Of a stretch of DNA of 64,000 nucleotides, positions 10,120 through 64,000 are shown piece after piece. The DNA lies in NCBI RefSeq assembly GCF_006345805.1, contig NC_042999.1, positions 44,516,001 through 44,580,000 of the forward strand, in the 5' to 3' direction. This DNA is from Octopus sinensis. Lineage: Eukaryota. Every line of letters starts with the position of its first letter. Positions within the stretch are counted from its first letter, which is position 1. The notes beneath the pieces were generated by a model. The model was not told the DNA's origin, ran no database searches, and worked only from the letters and a program-made list of their open reading frames with translations. The position numbers were made by a program, and so were the translations under genes.

Positions 10120-10500
10120 AGTTTGGGATTCAGTCTCACTTTGACCCATGTCTTACTGGGTGTCCTACTTCCACAAGTTCCATCCATTTTAAGTGATTGG
10201 CACTTCTTTAAGCAACTGTCCTCATCCATATGCATCACATGACCAAACCAGTACAGTCTTTTCTCTTGCATATTGCATCTAATTCCTCATATGCCTAACT
10301 TTTCTCTCAATACTCTGTTGTACATGTACACTGACACTGCGCATCCAACAGAACATATCAGGTCCTTCCTCTCTAGTCTTTGCATGTCCTCTGCATTCAG
10401 GGCCTATGTCTCTTAGAGAGAGAAACTTCTGGTTGCCAACAGAGATAAAAGCTCTCTGAACTTTCTTCATCTTATTCTTATTCTAGTAATTACACTTTCA
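10120..10500 (-). mobile_element. Decayed RTE-LINE RT C-terminal fragment
   Basis: Translation RLYWFGHVMHMDEDSCLKKCQSL...G-x-RTPSKTW matches the younger RTE copies. Similar decayed + strand fragments at ~24030-24370 and ~25600-26290. Confidence 0.7.
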
Positions 10501-13598: not shown

Positions 13599-15523
13599 CA
13601 GGGTGAGGTAAAAGTCATGTCCCATAGGAGTTAATTAATTAATAATGTTTTAAATGTCTAATTTCTTCTGATATCTTCTTATTTGCAGAAACAACTTTGA
13701 TGAATTAAGATGAGTGAAAAACTAATGAAGGATGAATGGGTTACCTTAGTGTTCATGTATTGGAAAGCAGGTGCTACTCACAGATCTGTTTAAAAGGAAC
13801 TCAACAGGTAGAATCTACACTGACTTCCAATAGATAAGTGTAATTAATCATTTTAAAGAAACTAGTAGTGTTTCTGACCACCCTTGAAGTGGCAGATCGA
13901 AAGTGCAACCAAATCAACATCAATGGTGGAATTGAAAATGAAATGCAGTAAAATAACAGAGGAAACTCTCTGATGTGTTAACCCTTTCGTGTTCAGATTA
14001 CTCTATCAGATCATCATCATCATCATCATCGTTTAACGTCCGTTCTCCATGCTAGCATGGGTTGGACAGTTCGACTGGGGATCTGGGAAGCCAGAAGGCT
14101 GCACCAGGCTCCAGTCTTATCTGGCAGTGTTTCTACAGCTGGATGCCCTTCCTAACGCCAACCACTCCGTGAGTGTAGTGGGTGCTTTTTACGTGCCACC
14201 TGCACAGGTGCCAGGCGAGGCTGGCAACGGCCACGGTCGGATTGGTGTATTTTATGTGCCACCGGCACAGAAGCCAGACGAGGCGGAGTTGGCATCAGCC
14301 ACGAGTCGGATGGTGCTTTTTATGTACCACCAGACCAGGGATCCTGGCTGATTCAATTCGATTTCGATTTCGCTTGCCCCAACATGTCTTCGCAAGCAAG
14401 GGGGTTGGCATGGGTGCCTGTTGTACGGTCAGATTGGTGTATTTTACGTGCCGCCGGCACGGAAGCCAGTGGAGGCGGCGCTGGCATCGGCCACGAGTCG
14501 GATAGTGCTTTTTACGTACCACCAGACCAGGGAACCTGGCAGGTTCAATTCGATTTCGCTTGCCCCAACATGTCTTCGCAAGCAAGGGGGTTGGCATGGG
14601 TGCCTGTCGTACGGTCAGATTGGTGTATTTTACGTGCCACCGGCACAGAAGCAAGTGGAGGCGGCGCTGGCATCGGCCACGAGTCGGATAGTGCTTTTTA
14701 CGTACCACCAGACCAGGGATCCTGGCTGGTTCAATTCGATTTTGACTTTGATTTCGATTTCGCTTGCCCCAACATGTCTTCGCAAGCATGGGTGCCTGTC
14801 GTCGGATGAGGTTCTATATCGACTTCGCTTGCCCCAACAGGTCTTTGTGTCCAAGGGAGGAAAGGCATTCATAAGTGGGCTGGGCTCACTTGTCCTGCCT
14901 GGTCTTCTCACGTACAGAATATTTCCAAAGGTCTCGGTCGCTGGTCATTTCCTCAGTGAGGCCTAAAGTTCGAAGGTCGTGCTTCACCACCTCGTCCCAG
15001 GTTTTCCTGGGTCTACCTCTTCCACGGGTTCCCTCAACTGCTAAGGATTGGCACTTTCTCACACACCTATCTTCATCCATTCTCGCCACATGACCATACC
15101 AGCGCAATCGTCTCTCTTGCACACCACAACTGATGCCTCTTAGGTACAACATTTCTCTCAAGGTGCTAACGCTCTGTCGAGTATGTATTACTTATTTATT
15201 CATTACTTTGAATTTATCAGGCATTATCTCTTAGCTTCAAGATATTGGTGGTATGATTGTTTACTTTTAAAATGACATTGTAGTATAGATGTAAGAGGTC
15301 AGATCTGGTCAGTTTGAACGAAAAACAGGTAAAATATTTGGGCTGGATATGACTGGTTTAAATGCTAAAGGGTTAATGAACCATGCAGGCACAGAATTGA
15401 AATGTGTTATGAAAAGGAAGGGGAGCATTTTGAACAGCACATAAAACTAGCAAATAAAATTTTCCTGTGTAATTATACTTTTGATAAATTATCCCTGTGG
15501 TGCATGACTTTTGCTTCACCCTG
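13599..15523 (+). mobile_element. Internally deleted Tc1/mariner element hosting nested MITE and RTE insertions
   Basis: TA|CAGGGTGAGGTAAAAGTCATG with an inverted copy at 15503-15523 (19/21). Decayed N-terminal FKETSSVSDHP*SGRS (13852) and C-terminal RIEMCYEKEGEHFEQH (15393) transposase motifs. Confidence 0.75.
14010..15188 (-). mobile_element. 5'-truncated RTE LINE: RT C-terminus, 3' UTR with ~190-bp tandem repeats, (GAT)n tail
   Basis: ORF 14886-15161 RRLRWYGHVARMD...RGRGRPRKTWDEVVKHDL...KTRQDK*; UTR and tail shared with the 32, 46.7 and 54 kb copies. Confidence 0.9.
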
Positions 15524-26380: not shown

Positions 26381-26443
<63 letters not shown>

Positions 26444-26700
26444 GCTTACCTATGTATATATGTATATGTCTGTATATATGTATGTATATATATATGTATA
26501 TATGAATGTACATAGGTATATATCTTTGTATATATGTATGTATCAATATACATACATATATATATATATATATGTACATTAGTATATATGTATATATCTT
26601 TGTATATATGTATGTACATACGTATATATCTCTGTATATATGTGTGTGTATATGTATATATGTGTGTGTATTTATATACATAAATGTATGTATTTATATA
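26300..26700. repeat. Compound (TA)n/(TATG)n microsatellite
   Basis: Direct inspection; source of the Y/I/M/C/V/H ORFs. Confidence 0.95.
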
Positions 26701-28151: not shown

Positions 28152-28317
28152 TATGCAGTATTAATCCCCCATTATTACAATGTACATTGTTAAATTCACT
28201 TTCAAAATATTAAACGTAAACAAAGAATTCTTATATATACATGTGCAAGTTAAGCGAAAGGTATAAATTCATGAATATTTATCTACAAAATTTAATAAAG
28301 TATACAAAAATCCAATA

Positions 28318-28342
28318 TGTATATGTGTGTGTGTGTATGTAT

Positions 28343-28385
<43 letters not shown>

Positions 28386-28586
28386 TATATGTATATATGC
28401 GTGTATATATATATATATGTATCTATATGTGTGTATGTATATATGTGTGTATATATAAGTATATATGTCTATATATGTTTGTATATATATGTCTAATATG
28501 TTTGTATATATATGTCTATATATGTTTGTATATATATGTCTATATATATTTGTATATATATGTCTATATATATGTTTGTATATATA

Positions 28587-28624
<38 letters not shown>

Positions 28625-28729
28625 TATATATATATGTTTGTATATATATGTCTATTATATATGTTTGTATATATATGTCTATATATATATTTTGTATTAT
28701 ATGTCTATATATATATGTTTGTATATATA

Positions 28730-28760
<31 letters not shown>

Positions 28761-29017
28761 GTTTGTATTTAGATGTCTATATATATGTTTGTATTTAGAT
28801 GTCTATATATATGTTTGTATATATGTCTATATATATGTTTGTATTTAGATGTCTATATATATGTTTGTATATATGTCTATATATATGTTTGTATTTAGAT
28901 GTCTATATATATATGTTTGTATATATGTCTATATATATGTCTATATATATGTTTGTATATATATGTCTGTATATGTATATATATATATGTATATATATTT
29001 ATAGACATATATATAAC

Positions 29018-29056
<39 letters not shown>

Positions 29057-29572
29057 GTGTGTGTATATATATATGTATATATGTGTGTGTATATATATGT
29101 ATATATGTGTGTGTATATATATATGTATATATATGTGTGTATATATATATATATGTGTGTGTGTATATATATATGTATATATATATATGTGTGTGTATAT
29201 ATATATATGTATATATAATGTCTGTATATGTATATATATGTTTATATATATGTATATATGTCTATATATATATGTATATTTATATATACATACACATGAC
29301 TATATATTTATGTGTGTATATATATATACATGACTATATATATGTGTGTATATATATATATACACACACGTATATATATACGTGACTATATATATACATA
29401 TACACACGGATGTGTGTATATATACATAGATGTGTAAATAGATGTCTATATATATATGTCTGTATATAGATGTCTATGTATGTATATATATGTCATATTG
29501 TATATGTCTATATATACATGTCTGTATATATGTCTATATATATGTGTATGTATTTATATGTCTATATGTCGG

Positions 29573-29607
<35 letters not shown>

Positions 29608-29642
29608 GTATATATATATATATATATGTATATTATATATAT
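28318..29642. repeat. 1.3-kb compound TA/TG microsatellite with a ~22-24-bp higher-order unit
   Basis: Units like TATATATGTCTATATATATGTTTG recur across 28460-28960. Confidence 0.95.
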
Positions 29643-29848
29643 GGGCCTCGTCTGGCCCCCGTCCTGGTGGCACGTAAAAAGCACCCACTACACTCATGGA
29701 GTGGTTGGTGTTAGGAAGGGCATCCAGCTGTAGAAACACTGCCGGATCAGACTGGGCCGGGCGAAGCCTACTGGCTTCCCAGACCCCAGTTGAACCGTCC
29801 AACCCGTGCTAGCATGGAAAACGGACGTTAAACGATGATGATGATGAT

Positions 29849-29898
29849 GTATATATGTATGTATGTATATGTATCTATATGTATGTGTGTATGTATAT

Positions 29899-29941
<43 letters not shown>

Positions 29942-30156
29942 ATGTATTTGTATGTATGTATATGTATGTATGTATGTATGTATATGTATGTATGTATATG
30001 TATGTATGTATATGTATGTATATGTATGTATATGTATGTATGTATATATATGTATGTATGTATGTATATATATATGTATGTATATATATGTATATATATA
30101 TGTATGTATGTATATATATGTATATATATGTATATATATATGTATGTATATATATG

Positions 30157-30195
<39 letters not shown>

Positions 30196-30295
30196 GTATA
30201 TATATATTATGTATATATATGTATGTATATATATTTATATATATATATGTATGTATGTATATATATATGTATATGTATATATATATGTATCTATG

Positions 30296-30352
<57 letters not shown>

Positions 30353-31072
30353 GTGCATATATATGTATGTATATATATATATGTATGTATATATGTATGT
30401 ATATGTATGTATGTATATATATATGTATATATATGTATGTATATGTATGTATGTATATATATGTATGTATGTGTATGTATGTATATATGTATGTATGTGT
30501 ATGTATGTATATATATATGTATGTATATGTATGTATATATGTATGTATGTATGTATGTATATATATATGTATATATATATGTATATATATATGTATGTAT
30601 GTATATATGTATGTATGTATATATGTATGTATGTATGTATATATATGTATGTATATACATATGTATATATGTATGTATGTATATATGTATGTATGTATGT
30701 ATATATATATGTGCATATATATGTATGTATGTATATATATATGTATATATGTATATATATATGTATATATGTATATATATATGTGCATATATATGTATGT
30801 ATGTATATATATATGTATATATGTATATATATATGTGCATATATATGTATGTATATATATATGTGCATATATATGTATGTATATATATGTGCATATATAT
30901 GTATGTATATATGTGCATATATATGTATGTATATATGTGCATATATATGTATGTATATATGTATATATATATGTGCGTATATATGTATGTATATATTTGT
31001 ATATATATATGTATGTATATATATGTATTCATCTATGTGTATATATCTATGCATGTATATATATGTATATAC
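29849..31072. repeat. 1.2-kb (TATG)n/(TA)n alternating purine-pyrimidine tract
   Basis: Direct inspection; explains the 165-475 aa pseudo-ORFs. Confidence 0.95.
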
Positions 31073-32086: not shown

Positions 32087-32710
32087 ATCATCATCATCAT
32101 CATCATCATTTAGCGTCCGTTTTCCATGCTAGCATGGGTTGGACGGTTCTACTGGGGTCTGTGAAGCCGGAAGGCTTCATCAGGCCCAGTCAAATCTGGC
32201 AGTGTTTCTACGGCTGGATGCCCTTCCTAATGCCAACCACTCCGTGAGTGTAGTGGGTGCTTTTTACGTGCCACCCGCACTGGTGCCAGACAGAGCTGGC
32301 AAACGGCCACGAACGGATGGTGCTTTTTATGTGCCAGGCGAGGCTGGCAACGGACACGAAACGGGGCGGTGCTGGCAACTGTCGCGAAACGGAAAGTTCT
32401 CTTACATGCCACCGGCACTGGTAACACATCTGCAATTTCCATTGATCGATTTCGATTCTGATCCTCACTTGCCTCAATGGGTCTTCACAAGCAGAGTTTC
32501 GACATGCCACCGGCACTGGTAGCACATCCGCAATTTCCATTGATCGATTTCGATTCTGATCCTCACTTGCCTCAACACGTCTTCACAAGTAGAGTTTTGT
32601 GTCCCAAGAAGGGAAGGTATGCATACGTAGGCTGGCTCCATCCCATGTAGAAGGCCACGGGTTGTGGACTCACTTGTCCTGCCGGGTCTTCTCGCGCACA
32701 GCACACTTCC
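32087..32710 (-). mobile_element. 5'-truncated RTE LINE 3' end, near-identical to 54275-54915
   Basis: Same UTR, 98-bp internal tandem duplication and KTRQDK* terminus. Confidence 0.9.
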
Positions 32711-39630: not shown

Positions 39631-40692
39631 ATGGAGACATCAGTCAGCAATACTTCTTGGGAAGATGAAGCAAAGTCAGATGAAGCTTCTTCCAGTGAAG
39701 AAAGTGAACATGACAACAAGAGTGATTTTGGAGAAGAGGAAGAAGAGGAGGAGGAAGAAGAAAGCAGGGATGAGGATGCATCTGACGGTATGATACAAGA
39801 CAATGCCTCTGATGGTATGGTACAAGACAATGCCTCTGATGGTATTGTACAAGACAATGCCTCTGATGGTATGGTACAAGACAATGCCTCTGATGGTATG
39901 GTACAAGACAATGCCTCTGATGGTATGGTACAAGACAATGCATCTGATGGTATGATGCAAGACAATGCATCCGACAGTGTGATACAAGACAATGTGTCGC
40001 TTTCAAAAGATATCGAGGATAATGTACCTGAGGAAAATGCATCAGCTGATGATAAGATCTTGTTTGATAACAGTGACAATGCTGACACAAGTTGTGAAAA
40101 AGATGATGATAGTTTTGCTGAGGATAATGAAGAATTAGATGATGTAAAAAAAAAGGCAGCTACAGATGTAGGTAATAAGTCGTCAGATGTTTTGAATGAA
40201 ACTGAAGTAACCGAATGTAATGAAGAAAAACAAGATGTAGATGATGCTAATACTGATGAAGTTGAACAAAATAATTTAGCTGATTCTAGCAATGAAGAAG
40301 GATTTGGTGGGAATTCTTCAAATGAAAATTTGTCTGAGTCAGAGCTTAAAGCAACATCATCAGTACCTACATCTAGCAATGATAAGGATAAGGATGTTAA
40401 AGAAGTTGTTGAAAATTCAAAGCAAACTGAACCTAGTTTTGATACAGAGAATGAGCAAAATGCTAATGAAGACAGTGTAAAAATTAGTCCAATTGAAAAC
40501 AGGTTAAGTGAGAAGAGAATAGTTAAAATCCGTGATAGTGGCATTCTTCCACAACCATCTCTATCAGAAGAACACGTGGAGTTGGATTATGATGAAGAAG
40601 ATATGGAAGAAACATCAGCAAGAACAGTTTCTATGGAAGTAAAAACTGACAAGGAGGAAAAAGATGAAGGAGAATGGGAGAAAGAGAAAAAG
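39631..40692 (+). CDS. ZC3H18: ZC3H18 first coding exon: long acidic low-complexity N-terminus with 8x 9-aa repeat
   Basis: Poly-T acceptor TTCAG|CAG| at 39596/39599, ATG 39631, 354 open codons, donor AAG|GTAAGA; in frame with downstream exons that are clearly ZC3H18. Confidence 0.85.
39778..39993 (+). repeat. ZC3H18: Coding 27-bp tandem repeat x8 (ASDGMVQDN)
   Basis: GCCTCTGATGGTATGGTACAAGACAAT units, 216 bp, in frame. Confidence 0.95.
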
Positions 40693-41103
40693 GTAAGACC
40701 AGATTGTTTTTCATTTTCTAATCAGTCACAAGACAACAAATTAGTCTTTGGGCTATTTATGAGCAAAGAGCTGGAGAGGTTAGGCGAATGGGTTCTTTTA
40801 ATAGAGAAGGTTAGGACAGTTGAACATCAGATTAAAGGTTTTAATATGGTAAGTCCTCACTGATCTAAGATTGACTCTAGAATGTAATGTTGAATAATGA
40901 AAAGTATCACTTCAATATCTTGTTGATTTGAAGCATCCATAAAATTGTCCTAAAAATTTGCTGTTGCTAGGCTTTTAGCTAGCATATATGTATGTATACA
41001 TGAACATATGTATATGAATATGTTTGTGCGCATTGTGTGTGTATTTATACACATACATATACGTGTTGTGTATGTATGTGTGTGTATATATATATATATA
41101 TAT

Positions 41104-43786: not shown

Positions 43787-43928
43787 GATGATGATTGTGA
43801 AGAAGGTGAAATACGTGAACCTGGCAGCAAGAAACCATTCCAAAAGCCACTTTGCCGATTCTTTTCCAAAGGTCACTGTACATGGGGTGCTTCCTGTAGA
43901 TTTTTACATCCAGGAGTCAATGATAAAG
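43787..43928 (+). CDS. ZC3H18: ZC3H18 exon with CCCH zinc finger (DDDCEEGEIREP...CRFFSKGHCTWGASCRFLHPGVNDK)
   Basis: C-x8-C-x5-C-x3-H finger nearly identical to human ZC3H18 CRFFMKGNCTWGMNCRFIHPGVNDKG; TGAAG| acceptor, G|GTTATA donor. Confidence 0.95.
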
Positions 43929-44784
43929 GTTATATATACTTTATTTATCTTTAATGTAAATCCCTTTATAAAAAAAACATTAATATTACTAGTATGAAGA
44001 AAGATAAAAATCATGAGTGTTTTGACATTTATAACTCTTGTGAAAATAATTAAAGTGAATCTTTTATTTGATGAAAATGAGCTAAAACAGCAAATAATAA
44101 TGTAATAGGATGAGTCACTTGAACTCAACTGTTGAGGATCAGTTGGAGGAATGCTATACAAATAATATAAATTTGTCAATGAGTTTGCCTATGATGTGAA
44201 GGCATGTAGCCTAGTGGTTAGGGTGTTGGGTCACAATTGTAAGGTTGTGGTTTTGATTTCCAGACCAGGCAGTTGAATTCTTGGCATTTCATGTTCATGC
44301 TGCTCCAGTTCGCTTGGCCTAAATTGAGTACTGGTAATAGGTGAGGGTTAATCCTGCAACAGACAGCATCCTCTTTCAAGATAAACTCCAGCCTAAAGAA
44401 CCTAAGACCATTCATAATGAAAAGCTGTATCCACAGTGCTAGGCCATATTAAAAAATAATGCAAATCTGTGCAAGCAATCATTGAAGCTCTGAATATTTC
44501 AGAATGCAGTTAGTACTCGGGTGAGGACATGGTCGTGTGGTTAAGAATTCATTTCATAATTCTCTGGCTTCAGGCTCGATCGCCCTACATGGAACATTGG
44601 GCAAGTGTTTTCTAGGCACACCCTCACATTGTGGGTGGAATTTGGTAAATGGAAGCTCATTGGAGGGACTGTTCTTATATGCTAAACTTTAATCCACACC
44701 TCAGATTAACATTGACACTTGGCCCTTGGACATCTTTAATGGAGCTCTGTAGTGTTGTGAGAATTCTGGCTATGTCTACTTTAA

Positions 44785-46701: not shown

Positions 46702-48095
46702 ATCATCATCATCGCTTAACGTCCATTTTCCATGCTGGCATGGGTTGGATGGTTCGACTGGGGTCTGGGAAGCTAGGAGGCTGCACCAGGCTCCAGTCTG
46801 AAATGGCAGTGTTTCTACAGCTGGATGCCCTTCCTAATGCCAACCACTCTGAGAGTGTAGTGGGTGCTTTTTATGTGCCAACGGCACAGGGGCCAGAGGG
46901 GGCTGGCAACGACTGCGATCGATTGATGCTTTTTATGTGCCACCGGCACGGAAGCCAGTCAAGGCAGTACTGGCATCGGCCACATTCGGATGGTGCTTTT
47001 TATGTGCCACCAGCATGGGGATCACAACTAAAATTTCATTTGATTTTGGTTTTGATGTACTTGACTCAATAGGTCTCCTCAAGCACTGCATGTCGCTCTA
47101 CGATCCAAGGTACTTTTGAGTGGGCTGGTTATGCGACACTGGTGTAGGTTACAGCTGTGAACTCATTTTATTTGCCAGGTCTTCTCAGTCACAGCATATC
47201 TCCAGAGGTCTCAGTCTTTTATCATTGCCTCTCTGAGGCCCAACGTTCGAAGGTCATGCTTCACCACCTCATCCCATGTCTTCCTGGGTCTCCCTCTACC
47301 CCGGATTCCTTCCACTGTTTGGGAGTGGCACTTCTTCATGCAGATCTCCACATCCATCCATAGTACATGACCATACCAATGCAAACGTCTCTCTTGCACG
47401 CCACATCTGATGCTTCTTATGTCCAACATGTCTCTCAGGGTGCTTACACTCTGTTGTGTGTGCACATTGACATTACACATCCAGTGGATCATGCTAGCTT
47501 CATTTCTTTCAAGCCTGCGCATGTCTTCAGCAGTCATGACCCATGTTTCACTGCCGTGAAGCATGGCAGTTTGCACACTTGCATAGTACAATTTACCTTT
47601 CACTCTGAGCGAGTGGCCCTTTGTCACCAGTAGGGGTAGGAGCTTTCTGAACTTTGCCCAGGCTATTCTTATTCTAGTGGTAACACTCTCTGAGCATCCA
47701 CCCCCACTACAGACTTGGTCACCTAGGTAATGGAAGCTATCAACTACTTTTATTTTTTTTCCCCCCTGGCATGTGACGGAATCTGTTTTCTGAGCATCTG
47801 TAATGTTTATTGCCCCTGTACATTGCCGCACACGAAAGCTATCTTCCCAGTTAATCTTCCTTTGATGTTATTGCACCTCATATGTGTCCATAGCTTACAC
47901 TGGGTATATCTTATAGAGTTTCTACCTACACCTTTTCTACAGATCAAGCAGGGCCACCTACCTGAAGGGGTGTGTGAGGTGTTTGCCTTCCTACTTACTA
48001 GAACTTTGATCTTTGCAACATTGACTCTAAGGCCCTTCGATTCTAAACCTTGCTTCCACACCTGGTCAGGAGTAAATGTCACATGACTGAATACT
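46702..48095 (-). mobile_element. Longer 5'-truncated RTE LINE with frameshifted RT C-terminal half
   Basis: ORFs 47807-48121 and 47211-47831: GLESKGLRVNVAKIKV...FHYLGDQV...RIRIAWAKFRKL...AMLHGSETW...RGRGRPRKTW. Confidence 0.9.
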
Positions 48096-48609
48096 GAATT
48101 TTTTGGTGTCAGTTTTGGCAAATATATTATGGTGATTCTCTAGTTTATTTCTAAAATGATTTGAAGATTCTGCTGTGAAAACAATATGAAGACAGTATGT
48201 CAACCAACTGTTGATGTTAAGATCAAAGAGGATTTAGTGGTATCATATGCAAATTTTATTGATTGTGTTTATGCATTTTTAAAACTATTCAATGCTTGCT
48301 GTCGTGTAGAAAATAATATAAAGAAAAGAGAAGTACTCAGTGGCCAGTGGGATGTATTTGAGGTACATAGACAAATACTGATATAGGAAATAACATAAGA
48401 ATTATTGATTTCTCAAGATTATCTCTACTTCTAGTAGATGTCATAATTACCAAAAAGCAGTTAAGACCGGCTCTACATCAAAAGGAGAGATAATCTCAAA
48501 GCTCAAGAATTCTCCACAGTTGACATTCCATTAAAGAAAAGGACTGATTTATTGTCTGGAGATAAGAGGATTGTCATGAACATGTGTTTCTGTATCAGAC
48601 ACTCTAGAC

Positions 48610-54274: not shown

Positions 54275-55452
54275 ATCATCATCATCATCATCATCATCGT
54301 TTAGCGTCCGTTTTCCATGCTAGCATGGGTTGGACGGTTCTACTGGGGTCTGTGAAGCCAGAAGGCTTCATCAGGCCCAGTCAAATCTGGCAGTGTTTCT
54401 ACGGCTGGATGCCCTTCCTAACGCCAACCACTCCGTGAGTGTAGTGGGTGCTTTTTACGTGCCACCCGCACTGGTGCCAGACAGAGCTGGCAAACGGCCA
54501 CGAACGGATGGTGCTTTTTATGTGCCACCGGCACGAGGGCCAGGCGAGGCTGGCAACGGACACGAAATGGGGCGGTGCTGGCAACGGTCGCGAAACGGAA
54601 AGTTCTCTTACATGCCACCGGCACTGGTAACACATCTGCAATTTCCATTGATCGATTTCGATTCTGATCGTCACTTGCCTCAACGGGTCTTCACAAGCAG
54701 AGTTTTGACATGCCACCGGCACTGGTAGCACATCCGCAATTTCCATTGATCGATTTCGATTCTGATCCTCACTTGCCTCATCACGTCTTCACAAGTAGAG
54801 TTTTGTGTCCCAAGAAGGGAAGGTATGCATACGTAGGCTGGCTCCATCCCATGTAGAAGGCCACGGGTTATGGACTCACTTGTCCTGCCGGGTCTTCTCG
54901 CGCACAGCACACTTCCAGAGGTCTCGGTCTCTAGTCATTTCCTCAGTGAGACCTAAAGTTCGAAGGTCGTGCTTCACCACCTCGTCCCAGGTTTTCCTGG
55001 GTCTGCCTCTTCCACAGGTTCCCTCAACCGCTAGGGTGTGGCACTTTTTCACACAACTATCTTCATCCATTCTCGCCACATGACCATACCAGCGCAAACG
55101 TCTCTCTTGCACACCACAACTGATGCTTCTTAGGTCCAGCTTTTCTCTCAAGGTACTTACACTCTGCCGAGTGTGAGTACCGGCATTACACATCCATCGA
55201 AGCATACTGGCTTCATTTCTAGCGAGCTTACGCATATCCTCAGCAGTCACGGCCCATGTTTCACTGCCATGTAGCATGGCTGTTCGTACACACGCATCAT
55301 ACAGTCTGCCTTTCACTCTGTGCGAGAGGCCTTTTGTCACCAGCAGAGGTAAGAGCTCTCTGAACTTTGCCCAAGCTATTCTTACTCTAGCAGTTACACT
55401 TTCAGCACACCCGCCCCCGCTGCTGACTTGGTCACCTAGGTAACGGAAACTA
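54275..55452 (-). mobile_element. 5'-truncated RTE LINE, young copy
   Basis: Intact ORF 54876-55340 (RT C-terminus), 3' UTR, (GAT)n tail. Confidence 0.92.
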
Positions 55453-60400: not shown

Positions 60401-60640
60401 GTAACTACTTTTTAAAAAAAATTTTTTAAAGCAAAATACACATTTTTAATTTCATATTTTTGTGAGAATTTTGATTCTGGAACTATTCTTGATTATTTAT
60501 TCCAATCAGAGTAGATAAACTACTTTATTATTTTTTTATAATATAATTACTTGGACTTCATCACAAAATAGGACCCAAAGAATTTGTAATATATTTTATT
60601 TTATCTTGCTTGTTAACTATTTTTGATTATTATCTTCTAG

Positions 60641-60909
60641 ACTCACCCGGAGCTGGAGTGGCAGTTCAAGTGGCAGTAGTTTATCACATTCACTGTCCAG
60701 ATCTCACTCTTTATCCCGTTCAAGATCCCGTTCACAAAGTCGGTCTTCATCATCATCCTTTTCACGGTCTCGCAGTGCTAGTAGCATTTCATCTCTTAGC
60801 AGTACAGGTTCATCAAGTTCTAGTGGAAGTGCTGATTCAGAGCATCTTTACCGTGATATTGCCAGTCCAGCAAGTTCCCGTGGCAAATCACCTTCACACA
60901 GACTTAAAG
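60641..60909 (+). CDS. ZC3H18: ZC3H18 exon, RS/serine-rich (...SADSEHLYRDIASPASSRGKSPSHRLK)
   Basis: TTCTAG|A ... G|GTAAGC; matches SVDSEDMYADLASPVSS. Confidence 0.92.
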
Positions 60910-60943
60910 GTAAGCAATGTAACTATTGAAAGAAACGTATTCT

Positions 60944-61169
60944 TATTTCTTTATTGCCCACAAGGGACTAAACATAGAGGGGACAAACAAGGACAGACAA
61001 AGAGATTAAGTCGATTACATCGACCCCAGTACACAACTAGTACTTAATTTATCGACCCCGAAAGGATGAAAGGCAAAGTCGACCTTGGTGGAATTTGATT
61101 TCAACGTAATGGCAGACGAAATACCGTTAAGCATTTCATCCGGCGTGCTAACGTTTCTGCCAGCTCGCC
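60944..61169 (-). mobile_element. Family D SINE with an 18-bp target-site duplication
   Basis: TTGAAAGAAACGTATTCT at 60926-60943 and 61170-61187; tRNA-like head GGCGAGCTGGCAGAAACGTTAGC. Confidence 0.88.
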
Positions 61170-61297
61170 TTGAAAGAAACGTATTCTAGCTGGTTGGTAA
61201 TCAATCAGAATAAGTTGCACTTATTCTTTAAGGTACCTACTTCTTGTTTACAAGCTATCTAATGTGCAACCATTCTGTTTGTTAAGAGGATCTAAAA

Positions 61298-61549
61298 CAG
61301 TAGTTCTCAACTGGGGTCTCTATGACCCTTGGGAATCCATGTAAGATTTTGATGTTAAAATATATGTACAATAAATTGGTTATACTTCTGCAACATAAAA
61401 GCCATCTTAACATTTCTATATACAATTTCTAATAATATTTAATTATAAAAATACAATAGGATTTTTTAAACATTGAATGTCTATGAGAGTTCATCCAAGT
61501 ATAATAGGAATCAAGAGGACCCAAGGTAAAAAATGGTTGATGGCCACAG
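61298..61549. mobile_element. hAT (Charlie-type) MITE, degenerate
   Basis: CAGTAGTTCTCAAC left TIR; TSD ATCTAAAA / ATCTAAAC; degenerate right TIR. Confidence 0.65.
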
Positions 61550-61764
61550 ATCTAAACTAATTTAATCATGTGGCTTGCAATCAAGTAATTTCATTAGTGT
61601 TTCATATAGAAAATTATAAGTTTACTTACCACATTGATAATATTATTCATATGTGTGGCACCTTGGGCAAGTGTCTTCTACTATAGCCTTGGGCCTGCAA
61701 AAGCCTTGTGAGTGGATTTGGTAGATGGAAACTGAAAGAAGCCCGTCGTGTATATATATATATA

Positions 61765-63020
61765 TATATATTTGTAAAAAATGAAGTTTGAAAATGCTGC
61801 TATATTAGACAAATTTTAATTTTTATATATACATTATTTATTTAACATGTTTCGGTTCTTGAAATGACGAACCTTATCAAAAAAAATTATATATAAAAAA
61901 GATAGTTCATGCTATCAAATATAAAAAATTCATATATAATATTCATTAGAGTCAGACATAAAAAATTCATATATAGTAAAGCGAGTCCATGCTATATGTT
62001 TAAAGAGTATGATGTAGTAGTTCATAGTGGTGATATGCATTCAATATAAAAAATTCATGTTCTTGAAAAAGCAAGGAATTCATTTTAGATTTTACCTTGT
62101 GTTCCAATGGGAGCAACTGTAATGACTTTTGGTTGGTGTCTGTTCGTATAGTTTTGGTGAATCTTGTGAATTGTTTGGGTTTTATATCAGTTCAGCTTAG
62201 CTGTCTCACTTGCATTTTTCACTGACGTCATATAGTTCCCAACCAGTCAAAACTCAGTCTCAACGAATATATCCTGTTAGGAAACCAACCAAGCATAAAT
62301 CTAAGTCCTTCTATTATAAGGTCTTTGTTTATGCTGGACTAGCCACCTAACGAGATGATTGGTCAAAACATTGATGACGTCTCGTTCCGCTGGACTAGCC
62401 ACCTAACAGGATACAGTCATGGGTCAGATCTAATTTCAATCCGTCAAAAACAAGGATGACATATTTCTTCTGTGGCCAAACTTTCATTCTGCTTGGTTGG
62501 TTTCCTAACAGGATATGTTCGTTGAGACTGAGTTTTGATTGGTTGGGAACTATACGACGTCAGTGAAAAATGCAAGTGAGACAGCTAAGCTGAACTGATA
62601 TAAAACCCAAACAATTCACAAGATTCACCAAAACTATACGAACAGACACCAACCAAAAGTCATTACAGTTGCTCCCATTGGAACACAAAGTAAAATCTAA
62701 AATGAATTCCTCGCTTTTTCAAGAACATGAATTTTTTATATTGAATGCATATCACCACTATGAACTACTACATCATACTCTTTAAACATATAGCATGGAC
62801 TCGCTTTACTATATATGAATTTTTTATGTCTGACTCTAATGAATATTATATATGAATTTTTTATATTTGATAGCATGAACTATCTTTTTTATATATAATT
62901 TTTTTTGATAAGGTTCGTCATTTCAAGAACCGAAACATGTTAAATAAATAATGTATATATAAAAATTAAAATTTGTCTAATATAGCAGCATTTTCAAACT
63001 TCATTTTTTACAAATATATA
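61765..63020. repeat. Long inverted repeat (531-bp arms, 194-bp spacer) inserted in the (TA)n of a family A SINE (61652-63270)
   Basis: 61765-62295 is the reverse complement of 62490-63020 with no net indel and about 5 substitutions seen; SINE halves lie on either side. Confidence 0.95.
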
Positions 63021-63051
63021 CCCACTCATATACGAGCTAATCTTATTATAA

Positions 63052-63085
<34 letters not shown>

Positions 63086-63473
63086 ATGTATATGTTTGTG
63101 TGTCTGAGTTTGTCTCCCCAACATCGCTTGACAACCGATGTTGGTGTGTTTACGTCTCTGTAACTTAGTGGTTCCGCAAAAGAGACCGATAGAATAAGTA
63201 CTATGCTTACAAAGAATAACTCCTGTGGTCGATTTGCTCGGCTTAAGGTAGTGCTTCAGTATGGCCACTGGAACATGTAAAGAGTATGCCTGTTGTATGT
63301 TTTAAAATAAATCTTTTGAATTCCAAGCTGTGTTCTAACTCTGTTGATTTTTAATCCTTTAAAAAAAAAATTGGTAGCAAGTAATTTTTTTCGTTTTTTT
63401 TTTAAACAAGGATAATATGTTATCTCTTCAGTGATTGAACTAATTATTTTACTTTCATTGTTATTATTCTCAG

Positions 63474-63853
63474 AGAAAGAAAGAAGCCGTCAAAAAATAG
63501 TACGAAGTAGTAAGCCATCAAATAGTCAAATCTCATCAAAACCACATACTGGCCAGCCTGTGCCGTCAAAAACTCAAAAGCCAGAAAGTAGGCAAGGTGG
63601 GCAACAACAACAACAACAGCAACAACAACAACAACAACAGCAGCAGCAGCAGCAACAGCAACAACAACAGCAACAACCTCATCACCACCACCACCATCAT
63701 CACCATCATCATGCTGCAGCAGATTCATCTGCTACCACAAGAACCACAAGTACAGGGCCACCTAGTAGTACTTCAGTTTTACCCAGCAAAACTAAAGATC
63801 CCTTAAAAATTGTTGGACAGAAATCTAACATCAAACTAACTCTCATCAGCAAG
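63474..63853 (+). CDS. ZC3H18: ZC3H18 exon with Q25-P-H11 tract, ending IKLTLISK; gene continues beyond the window
   Basis: TTCTCAG|AG ... AAG|GTAATC; conserved IKLTL(L/I)(N/S)K motif. Confidence 0.9.
63602..63712 (+). repeat. ZC3H18: Coding CAA/CAG (Q25) and CAT/CAC (H11) tracts
   Basis: In-frame within the exon at 63474-63853. Confidence 0.95.
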
Positions 63854-64000
63854 GTAATCTCCTCTCTTATTTTCCCTCTGTGTAGTTAAGAAGTTCATTT
63901 TTTCAAATATGTGTTGGGTTCAGTCCCTCTACTTTGATTGTAGTTCTGACCATACCAAATCCTTGTGAATGAATTTGGTAGATGAAAAAATAAGAAGATT

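What the first reader, a model, noticed from the sequence alone, without database searches (positions are those of the whole stretch)
61765..63020. ~99%-identical 531-bp-arm hairpin inside ZC3H18 pre-mRNA
Seen: colinear arms with about 5 substitutions (some at CpG), a 194-bp spacer containing a 19-bp direct repeat (62333, 62389), inserted in the (TA)n of a SINE, 450 bp upstream of the polyQ/polyH exon. Established: coleoid cephalopods have extensive ADAR editing driven by dsRNA. Inference: this is a strong hyper-editing/endo-siRNA substrate and cruciform-prone site in the gene for a nuclear RNA-surveillance factor, and its arms are far too long for an ordinary MITE.
Basis: partly seen in the sequence, partly recalled or inferred. 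Interest (0 to 1): 0.7.

Follow-up and report, generated by a model that had tools for sequence, protein, structure and literature searches.

The report
Young palindromic transposon-like insert in intron
A real, evolutionarily young 1.26-kb DNA palindrome (two 534-bp mirror-image arms around a 188-bp centre), most likely a non-coding "foldback" transposon, sits inside an older SINE in an intron of a ZC3H18-like gene; it should fold into a long RNA duplex that editing enzymes attack, but this kind of structure is already well known and common in octopus.

Summary
The arms are 61765-62298 and 62487-63020: 534 nt, 6 substitutions, no indels, 98.9% complementary. The spacer is 188 nt and holds a 19-nt exact direct repeat. 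As RNA it folds into one stem (-920 kcal/mol).

The whole palindrome is an insertion into the internal (TA)n tract of a SINE. That SINE lies in a 2,564-nt + strand intron, and the palindrome ends 453 nt before the polyQ/polyH exon. I add three points:
- 26-31 orphan bases separate the right arm from the resumed SINE.
- A 15-mer occurs three times per arm and nowhere else in the window.
- The spacer consists of two related units.

It has no ORF over 46 aa (63 aa stop-to-stop), no Rfam family (no hammerhead) and no second copy in the 64 kb.

My best reading is a foldback-type, long-TIR, non-autonomous DNA transposon or deletion derivative, about ten times younger than its host SINE. I could not test copy number or an empty site, because no collection here holds this organism's DNA.

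- A hyper-editing substrate is plausible, and the class is documented in octopus.
- Endo-siRNA production is unlikely, because molluscs lack siDicer and siAgo.
- "Cruciform-prone" is overstated with a 188-bp spacer.

This is an ordinary kind of feature, of low to moderate interest.

The parts
61765..62298 (.). Left arm of the palindrome (534 nt). The outer ~300 nt are very AT-rich (GC 0.20-0.25); the inner part is about 0.40 GC.
62299..62486 (.). Asymmetric 188-nt spacer, built from two related direct units (about 62326-62381 and 62382-62483). Each unit carries the 19-nt repeat GCTGGACTAGCCACCTAAC (62333-62351, 62389-62407). The units weakly resemble the inner end of the right arm.
   Evidence: unit A vs unit B: 0/300 shuffles reach the score; spacer vs arm inner end: 8/300
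62487..63020 (.). Right arm of the palindrome (534 nt), reverse complement of the left arm apart from 6 substitutions.
61765..61770 (.). Outermost TATATA of the left arm. It mirrors 63015-63020 and cannot be told apart from a target-site duplication (TA, TATA or TATATA) in the (TA)n target. The element proper may therefore be 61771-63014 (TTTGTAAAAAATG...CATTTTTTACAAA).
63015..63020 (.). Outermost TATATA of the right arm; candidate right copy of the target-site duplication.
63021..63046 (.). Orphan 26 nt (CCCACTCATATACGAGCTAATCTTAT; up to 31 nt counting the degenerate TATAA) between the right arm and the resumed SINE (TA)n. Not SINE, not arm, and unique in the window. Could be filler, transduced DNA or a private indel.
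61921..62060 (+). Three copies of the 15-mer ATAAAAAATTCATRT in the left arm (61921, 61958, 62046). The mirror copies in the right arm are at 62725, 62813 and 62850 on the - strand. This subterminal repeated motif is found only in this element.
   Evidence: 6 matches against 0.23 expected; none elsewhere in 64 kb
62537..62561 (+). Motif GATTGGT-N12-GACGTC in the right arm (mirrored in the left arm around 62224-62248), with a third copy in the spacer at 62357-62381. It occurs nowhere else in the window.
61656..61764 (+). 5' half of the host SINE, ending in its internal (TA)n (61751-61771).
63047..63270 (+). Resumed (TA)n(TG)n and 3' half of the same host SINE. The host copy is 89.5% identical to a consensus of the five other window copies.
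60641..60909 (+). Upstream Ser/Arg-rich exon. The acceptor AG is at 60639-60640 and the donor GTAAGC starts at 60910. The host intron is 60910-63473 (2,564 nt), and the palindrome makes up 49% of it.
63474..63853 (+). Downstream polyQ/polyH exon. The acceptor ...TTCTCAG ends at 63473 and the donor GTAATC starts at 63854.

Best explanation
The feature is a genuine, recently formed, non-coding palindromic insertion. Most likely it is a foldback-type (very long terminal inverted repeat) non-autonomous DNA transposon, or an internally deleted derivative of one. It integrated as one unit into the (TA)n tract of an older SINE inside a 2.56-kb intron of a ZC3H18-like gene.

Shown:
- the palindrome and its exact limits;
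- its insertion relative to the SINE consensus;
- the lack of coding capacity;
- repeated motifs in the arms;
- arm-to-arm divergence about ten times lower than the host SINE's divergence from its consensus;
- its position in a sense-strand intron.

Inferred:
- mobility by a transposase acting in trans on the arm motifs;
- a TA, TATA or TATATA target duplication.

Inferred consequence: each pre-mRNA carries a ~534-bp stem with only 3 A·C mismatches, 2 G·U wobbles and 1 U·C mismatch. This is the type of long, near-perfect dsRNA that ADARs deaminate promiscuously, so the intron is probably hyper-edited and then spliced out, with little or no effect on the protein. Processing into endo-siRNA is unlikely in a mollusc. 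At the DNA level, the 188-bp asymmetric centre should largely protect the locus from cruciform or hairpin breakage.
For: Anatomy and fold:
- Palindrome anatomy; RNA fold -920 kcal/mol as a single stem.
- Both arms stop at the same nucleotide against (TA)n. The flanks are colinear halves of one SINE, not mirror images of each other, so the whole 1.26-1.28 kb is an insertion relative to the intact SINE copies.
- An even-length TA-type direct repeat is possible at both ends.

Transposon-like internal features:
- Three same-orientation copies per arm of a 15-mer found nowhere else in the window.
- A second repeated motif shared by the arms and the spacer. Arrays like these are typical of transposase-binding subterminal repeats in long-TIR elements (own knowledge: Tc3, IR/DR Tc1-like, Ac/Ds, En/Spm, FB).
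- No ORF above 46 aa (63 aa stop-to-stop).

Age: 6/534 differences between the arms, against 10.5% divergence of the host SINE from its consensus.

Transcription context: intron and splice sites read directly from the sequence.

Literature:
- Octopus has exceptional hyper-editing and an exceptional fraction of loci in long near-perfect dsRNA, and self-palindromic repeats are edited without a partner (PMC5625713).
- Molluscs lack siRNA machinery.
- The spacer effect on inverted-repeat fragility.
Against: - Only one copy exists in the 64-kb window.
- No other copy, solo arm, autonomous relative or empty site could be retrieved. The collections evidently contain no DNA of this organism, since even the abundant flanking SINE gave zero hits. 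Repetitiveness and mobility are therefore untested.
- The target duplication cannot be separated from the (TA)n target.
- The termini (TTTGTAAAA...) match no superfamily signature that I know.
- The 26-31 orphan bases on the right side are not expected from a clean cut-and-paste insertion.
- No RNA or small-RNA data were available, so the editing is an inference.
Confidence: 0.58

Rival explanations
1. In-place inverted duplication. A single-arm sequence (arm plus centre) first sat in the SINE's (TA)n. It was then copied in reverse by replication template switching or by fold-back repair of a break in the fragile TA tract. That would create the palindrome locally, with no foldback transposon family involved.
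For: - Single copy in the window.
- 26-31 orphan bases on one side only, resembling filler DNA at a repair junction.
- The centre is asymmetric, and its units point the same way as the right arm, as expected if the right arm plus centre was the original.
- (TA)n tracts are break-prone (own knowledge).
Against: - Both arms end at exactly the same base next to (TA)n.
- No flanking SINE sequence is included in the duplication. The reverse complement of the orphan bases does not match the left SINE flank above chance (58/500 shuffles reach the score).
- The flanks remain colinear halves of the SINE. Template-switch duplications rarely end precisely at an element boundary.
Confidence: 0.22
2. Assembly artefact: a chimeric or fold-back long read, or a collapsed or misjoined repeat, created a palindrome that does not exist in the genome.
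For: Palindromic artefacts do occur in long-read assemblies (own knowledge). No reads could be examined here.
Against: - The arms differ by 6 substitutions, 5 of them transitions and 2 at CpG. There is not one indel, even across A8/T8 runs. That is the pattern of real mutation, not of read error.
- There is a unique, structured 188-nt centre rather than an adapter or an abrupt turn.
- Outside the arms the sequence does not continue as a mirror image. It resumes the other half of the interrupted SINE.
Confidence: 0.05
3. A selected, functional hairpin. One version is an hpRNA-like or 'Mu killer'-like locus that makes small RNAs (si- or piRNA) against a transposon family or a gene. Another is a regulatory dsRNA that couples ADAR activity to splicing or nuclear retention of the ZC3H18-like transcript.
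For: - A very long near-perfect stem in a transcribed intron of a nuclear RNA-surveillance gene.
- High arm identity could reflect maintenance.
- Three of the mismatches are A·C, which ADAR favours (own knowledge).
Against: - Arm identity is explained just as well by youth.
- No conservation evidence is available.
- The arms have no recognisable gene or coding homology.
- Molluscs show no dedicated endo-siRNA pathway.
- Structures of this kind are very numerous in octopus, so a specific function is not required.
Confidence: 0.04
4. Inverted pseudo-LTR arrangement of a Penelope-like retroelement, or a head-to-head pair of two independent insertions of some other element.
For: Penelope-like elements often form inverted partial tandems (own knowledge).
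Against: - No hammerhead ribozyme or any other Rfam family in 61400-63400, even at E<=10.
- No RT or GIY-YIG ORF in or next to it.
- The LINE-like ORFs elsewhere in the window gave no Pfam RT hit.
- Two independent insertions would not be truncated at identical inner and outer bases.
Confidence: 0.04

Closest known systems
Foldback / very-long-TIR DNA transposons: Tc4 of C. elegans (about 1.6 kb with about 770-bp arms; own knowledge); FB, Galileo and Tetris of Drosophila (PMC4168063 and PMC4079207, listed); Tm1 of root-knot nematodes (PMC3169594)
   Same: Almost the whole element is two long inverted arms around a short centre. It has no coding capacity. The arms are AT-rich with internally repeated short motifs. 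It inserted into AT-rich DNA.
   Different: Family membership is unproven. There is no second copy, the target duplication is not unambiguous, and no related transposase is known. The arms are not built of long tandem arrays as in FB or Tetris. The termini match no known superfamily signature.
Self-palindromic repeats and inverted repeat pairs that drive ADAR hyper-editing: the palindromic Harbinger repeat of Xenopus, inverted Alu pairs in human, and repeat-derived dsRNA in Octopus bimaculoides (PMC5625713)
   Same: A long, nearly perfect intramolecular dsRNA inside a pre-mRNA, formed by a repeat that pairs with itself.
   Different: Editing has not been observed here. A 534-bp stem at 98.9% is at the long and perfect end of the range. 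The copy number of this element is unknown.
MITEs
   Same: A non-coding element with terminal inverted repeats that could fold back, sitting in an intron.
   Different: At 1,256 bp with 534-bp arms it exceeds usual MITE size (under about 800 bp) and TIR length (tens of bp). High copy number is untested.
Drosophila hpRNA loci and maize Mu killer (long inverted duplications that yield silencing small RNAs; own knowledge)
   Same: A transcribed inverted duplication several hundred bp long, with near-perfect arms and young age.
   Different: Those act through Dicer-2/AGO2 or plant DCLs. Molluscs lack siDicer and siAgo and show no endo-siRNA signature (PMC12479628, PMC11114477). No target gene or element homologous to the arms is known.
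Long DNA palindromes and quasi-palindromes as fragile sites (yeast Alu-IR system, PMC8053094; PMC10164571)
   Same: Long, near-identical inverted repeats in cis.
   Different: The 188-bp spacer is far above the roughly 8-12 bp at which fragility and fork arrest drop sharply. Such widely spaced repeats matter mainly when long single-stranded DNA is exposed.

Membership tests
Foldback / long-TIR non-autonomous DNA transposon | Long terminal inverted repeats make up most of the element, around a short non-repeated centre | tested here: met
   534-nt arms at 98.9% with a 188-nt centre
Foldback / long-TIR non-autonomous DNA transposon | No transposase ORF (non-autonomous) | tested here: met
   Longest ORF is 46 aa and longest stop-to-stop segment is 63 aa. 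No protein homologues were found.
Foldback / long-TIR non-autonomous DNA transposon | Target-site duplication flanking the inverted repeats | tested here: inconclusive
   TA, TATA or TATATA is possible on both sides, but the target is itself (TA)n. In addition, 26-31 orphan bases follow the right end.
Foldback / long-TIR non-autonomous DNA transposon | Insertion is discrete relative to an empty site | tested here: met
   The flanks are the two halves of one SINE, and the intact SINE copies in the window lack the insert. This uses paralogous copies, not an orthologous empty site.
Foldback / long-TIR non-autonomous DNA transposon | Repeated subterminal motifs (putative transposase binding sites) in the arms | tested here: met
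   ATAAAAAATTCATRT occurs three times per arm and only in the element. GATTGGT-N12-GACGTC is in the arms and the spacer. Binding itself is an inference.
Foldback / long-TIR non-autonomous DNA transposon | Multiple dispersed copies in the genome and a related autonomous element | not testable with these tools
   One copy in the 64 kb. The collections lack this organism: the SINE positive control gave 0 hits.
MITE | Small size (roughly under 800 bp) with short TIRs | tested here: not met
   1,256 bp with 534-nt arms
Tc1/mariner-type element | TA target duplication and conserved terminal CAGT/TACAGT-like ends | tested here: inconclusive
   A TA duplication is compatible but not separable from (TA)n. 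The termini read TTTGTAAAAAATG, not the usual motif (the motif is from my own knowledge).
Penelope-like element (inverted pLTR arrangement) | Hammerhead ribozyme in the repeat; adjacent RT/GIY-YIG ORF | tested here: not met
   No hammerhead or any other real Rfam hit at E<=10. No such ORF is present.
Helitron | 5'-TC ... CTRR-3' ends, insertion between A and T, 3' hairpin, no TIRs | tested here: not met
   The left end has no TC start, and the element is defined by 534-nt inverted arms.
ADAR hyper-editing substrate | Long, nearly perfect intramolecular dsRNA within a transcribed unit | tested here: met
   Single-stem fold at -920 kcal/mol. It lies inside the 60910-63473 intron, between two + strand exons with consensus splice sites.
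ADAR hyper-editing substrate | Clusters of A-to-G mismatches in RNA reads | not testable with these tools
   No RNA-seq access
hpRNA / endo-siRNA locus | Host has a dedicated siRNA Dicer and Argonaute and makes 21-22-nt duplex small RNAs from the hairpin | tested here: not met
   From the literature only. Molluscs, including O. bimaculoides, lack siDicer and siAgo and show no endo-siRNA signature (PMC12479628, PMC11114477). Small RNAs from this locus were not examined.
ZC3H18 orthologue (host gene) | Acidic N-terminal region, a single CCCH finger, an RD/RE-rich region with the RADEWxDPWRR motif, and a Ser/Arg-rich C-terminal part, in this order | tested here: inconclusive
   - Exons in this order on the + strand.
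- The CCCH exon is 65% identical (E 1e-21), and the RADEW motif matches, against a human ZC3H18 sequence I recalled from memory. That is a lead, not a database result.
- The protein database returned only unnamed CCCH proteins.
- PDB holds no ZC3H18 finger.

The most novel reading that the evidence does not exclude
The hairpin could be a maintained regulatory or defensive element rather than passive junk. One version is an intronic dsRNA that ties expression or splicing of a nuclear RNA-surveillance adaptor (ZC3H18-like) to ADAR or dsRNA-sensing activity. Another is a 'killer' hairpin that feeds piRNA or miAgo-loaded small RNAs against the transposon family it derives from, in a phylum thought to lack endo-siRNAs.
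Probability: 0.04. Interest if true: 0.65.

Novelty: new member of a known kind. Interest (0 to 1): 0.22.

Why it matters
If my reading is right, this is one clear, well-delimited example of a repeat that pairs with itself. Such repeats give octopus its unusually large load of long dsRNA and of hyper-editing. The locus could serve as a positive control for hyper-editing pipelines, and as a seed for defining a foldback transposon family in cephalopods.

It does not open a new question by itself. The host gene's role in RNA surveillance makes an autoregulatory story tempting, but nothing here supports one. The endo-siRNA idea runs against current evidence for molluscs.

Tried and rejected
**Searches for other copies**
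- blastn of the element against the window found only itself.
- The terminal 30-mer with up to 3 mismatches matched only the two ends.
- A six-frame pseudo-protein of the arm and spacer against the 5.8-billion-protein database gave no hit.
- An exact 25-mer gave 0 hits in metagenome contigs and 0 in viral contigs. A 19-mer gave 0 in prokaryote genomes.
- A 22-mer of the abundant flanking SINE, used as a positive control in the metagenome collection, also gave 0. These negatives therefore say nothing about copy number.

**Orthologous empty site**
- The only related eukaryotic contig retrievable (L001, ENA ERZ26052378) shares just the CCCH exon, at 79.5% nucleotide identity, and no SINE. It is too distant to use.

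**Element identity**
- Penelope-like element or hammerhead: rejected.
- Helitron ends: rejected by reading the termini.
- The orphan 26 nt as an inverted copy of the left SINE flank, or a piece of the element: not above chance.
- A tRNA-like module: none.

**Gene naming**
- The protein database gave only unnamed CCCH proteins.
- PDB gave only generic CCCH fingers.
- A literature search for ZC3H18 plus octopus found nothing relevant.

**Other**
- Pfam on the LINE-like and acidic-exon ORFs gave nothing above threshold.

Full report
**1. The observation**

The arms are 61765-62298 and 62487-63020, 534 nt long and 99% complementary, with 188 nt between them.

A base-by-base comparison finds six substitutions and no indels. 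Five are transitions. The one transversion lies at the inner edge. Two sit in CpG context, with the right arm keeping CG and the left arm reading CA.

On the + strand RNA, the six differences would be three A·C mismatches, two G·U wobbles and one U·C mismatch. The stem is therefore almost continuous. ViennaRNA folds the 1,256 nt into a single stem at -920 kcal/mol, with a branched, structured loop.

The 19-nt direct repeat in the spacer is exact, at 62333-62351 and 62389-62407. Nothing else in the 64 kb approaches this structure. The next-best inverted pair within 12 kb is 200 nt at 90%.

**2. Context**

The left flank (about 61656-61770) and the right flank (63047 to about 63270) are the two colinear halves of a single SINE copy. 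That family has at least five other copies in the window: three intact, and two shorter or more diverged. In the intact copies the two halves are joined by an internal (TA)n(TG)n tract.

Two refinements follow.

- The outermost six bases of each arm are TATATA. This is both self-complementary and identical to the target, so the true termini may be 61771 and 63014 (TTTGTAAAAAATG...). A target-site duplication of TA, TATA or TATATA is possible but cannot be demonstrated.
- Between the right arm and the resumed (TA)n lie 26-31 bases (63021-63046/51). They are absent from the other SINE copies and unique in the window. They are not significantly similar to the SINE or to the element in either orientation. 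They remain unexplained. Filler DNA, a transduced donor flank and a private indel of this SINE copy are all possible.

The host intron runs from a GTAAGC donor at 60910, after a Ser/Arg-rich exon (60641-60909), to the acceptor ...TTCTCAG ending at 63473. The polyQ/polyH exon (63474-63853) follows. The intron is 2,564 nt, and the palindrome is 49% of it. The palindrome starts 855 nt from the donor and ends 453 nt before the acceptor. Both exons are on the + strand, so the whole palindrome is part of the pre-mRNA.

**3. Anatomy of the element**

- The outer ~300 nt of each arm are very AT-rich (GC 0.20-0.25). The inner part and the centre are about 0.40 GC.
- Each arm carries three same-orientation copies of the 15-mer ATAAAAAATTCATRT, about 155, 195 and 280 nt from the outer end. 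The motif occurs nowhere else in 64 kb (6 matches against 0.23 expected).
- A second motif, GATTGGT-N12-GACGTC, sits about 50 nt from the inner end of each arm and once more in the spacer. It too is found nowhere else.
- The spacer consists of two related direct units. No shuffle out of 300 reached their alignment score. The units weakly resemble the inner end of the right arm (8/300). The centre is therefore asymmetric and points the same way as the right arm.
- There is no ORF over 46 aa, and the longest stop-to-stop stretch is 63 aa.
- No Rfam family matches. The only low E-value is a miRNA model hitting the TA/TG microsatellite.
- There is no tRNA-like module.

**4. Age**

The arms differ at 1.1% of positions. 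The host SINE copy differs by 10.5% from a consensus built from the five other copies. If rates are similar and no gene conversion has occurred, the palindrome is roughly an order of magnitude younger than the SINE insertion. This is an inference.

**5. What it is**

The topology fits integration of a pre-formed two-armed unit best: a foldback-type, long-TIR, non-autonomous DNA transposon or a deletion derivative of one. The points in favour are:

- a discrete insert with both arms ending at the same base;
- flanks that are colinear rather than mirrored;
- an even-length TA repeat possible at both ends;
- element-specific repeated motifs in the arms;
- no coding capacity.

Such elements are well known. 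Examples are Tc4 (from my own knowledge) and Galileo, Tetris and Tm1 (listed).

I hold this reading at about 0.58, not higher, because the defining population-level features could not be tested. Those are multiple copies, a consistent target duplication and an empty orthologous site. Every external route failed. The positive control, a 22-mer of the abundant SINE, also returned nothing. The collections therefore lack this organism. The one related eukaryotic contig found through the CCCH exon is too distant.

The main rival is an in-place inverted duplication during repair or replication of the fragile TA tract (about 0.22). It would explain the one-sided orphan bases and the asymmetric centre. 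It does not easily explain why both arms stop exactly at the SINE boundary.

A mis-assembly is unlikely (about 0.05) for three reasons. The differences are substitutions only, mostly transitions, some at CpG, with no indel in the long homopolymers. The centre is unique. The outer flanks do not continue the mirror image.

A Penelope-like origin has no support.

**6. How it most likely works**

At the RNA level, a 534-bp near-perfect stem in a pre-mRNA is a textbook substrate for promiscuous ADAR editing. Porath et al. (PMC5625713) report several relevant points:

- Octopus bimaculoides has one of the two strongest hyper-editing signals among the species surveyed.
- It has an exceptionally high fraction of loci in long, nearly perfect dsRNA (4.4 x 10^-3 of random 50-mers).
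- Repeats that are themselves palindromes are edited without needing a partner.

It also places this locus in an abundant, already described class. Editing of this particular intron is not shown.

The endo-siRNA part is contradicted by current literature. Molluscs, including O. bimaculoides, lack siRNA-type Dicer and Argonaute and show no Dicer-pair signature (PMC12479628, PMC11114477).

At the DNA level, yeast work shows that breakage and fork arrest at inverted Alu repeats fall sharply once the spacer exceeds about 8-12 bp (PMC8053094). The 188-bp asymmetric centre should therefore make cruciform or hairpin formation rare. "Cruciform-prone" is overstated.

**7. Gene and organism**

On the + strand the window holds, in order:

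- an acidic exon with an 8-copy 27-nt coding repeat (39631-40863);
- a single CCCH finger exon near 43.85 kb;
- an RD/RE-rich exon with the motif RADEWRDPWRR (about 56.8-57.0 kb);
- the Ser/Arg-rich exon;
- the polyQ/polyH exon.

Against a human ZC3H18 sequence that I recalled from memory, the finger exon is 65% identical (E 1e-21) and the RADEW motif aligns. This is a lead, not a database identification.

The protein database gave only unnamed CCCH proteins, the best at 75% identity over the finger exon. PDB gave only generic CCCH fingers.

The cephalopod origin rests on my recollection that this SINE is an octopus SINE. No tool confirmed it.

**8. Verdict**

It is a dsRNA and hyper-editing substrate by inference. 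It is not a likely endo-siRNA source. It is not especially cruciform-prone. It is "not a MITE" only in the sense that it belongs to the known foldback or long-TIR class.
- Novelty: a new member of a known kind.
- Interest: low to moderate.

Noticed in passing
window 63021-63046 (to 63051): Orphan 26-31 bases between the right arm and the resumed SINE (TA)n. They are unique in the window and are neither SINE nor arm. They could be filler DNA, a transduced donor flank or a private indel.
   Followed up: partly
window 28315-31071 (also 26381-26658): A degenerate (TA)n/(TATG)n microsatellite field of about 2.8 kb. It creates long spurious YIYI/CMYV ORFs and many low-identity inverted repeats.
   Followed up: no
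window 39776-39994: An 8-copy, 27-nt (9-codon) in-frame tandem repeat (DNASDGMVQ-type) at 93% identity, inside the large acidic exon of the ZC3H18-like gene.
   Followed up: no
window 14233-14742; 32404-32597; 54610-54805; also 46740-47072: A second repeat family, whose ORFs contain LDALPNANHSVSVVGAFYVPPA. It has internal tandem units of 186 nt or 98 nt. It forms 90-92% inverted pairs at 29650-29849/32092-32291 and 32096-32273/37572-37749, which are further potential dsRNA sources in the same transcription unit.
   Followed up: no
window 47211-48121 (-), 54876-55340 (-), 14886-15161 (-): Three fragments sharing the motif GVQERRLRWYGHV..MDE...RGRGRPRKTWDEVVKHDLRTLGL. They look like C-terminal remnants of a retrotransposon ORF, but there was no Pfam hit above threshold.
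   Followed up: partly
window 63598-63711: About 30 consecutive Gln codons (mixed CAA/CAG) followed, after one Pro, by 13 His codons, in the exon just downstream of the palindrome.
   Followed up: no
window 62073/62712, 62096/62689, 62230/62555: Three of the six arm differences would be A·C mismatches in the RNA stem. ADARs edit this context most efficiently (own knowledge). With only six differences, this has no statistical weight.
   Followed up: no
L001 (ENA ERZ26052378, contig ctg11151_28x_l, 2.99 Mb), 10325-10411: A large eukaryotic contig in an ENA assembly carries a CCCH exon 79.5% identical at the DNA level to window 43844-43930. It shares no other similarity and has no SINE, so it is a distant relative of the host gene.
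   Followed up: partly
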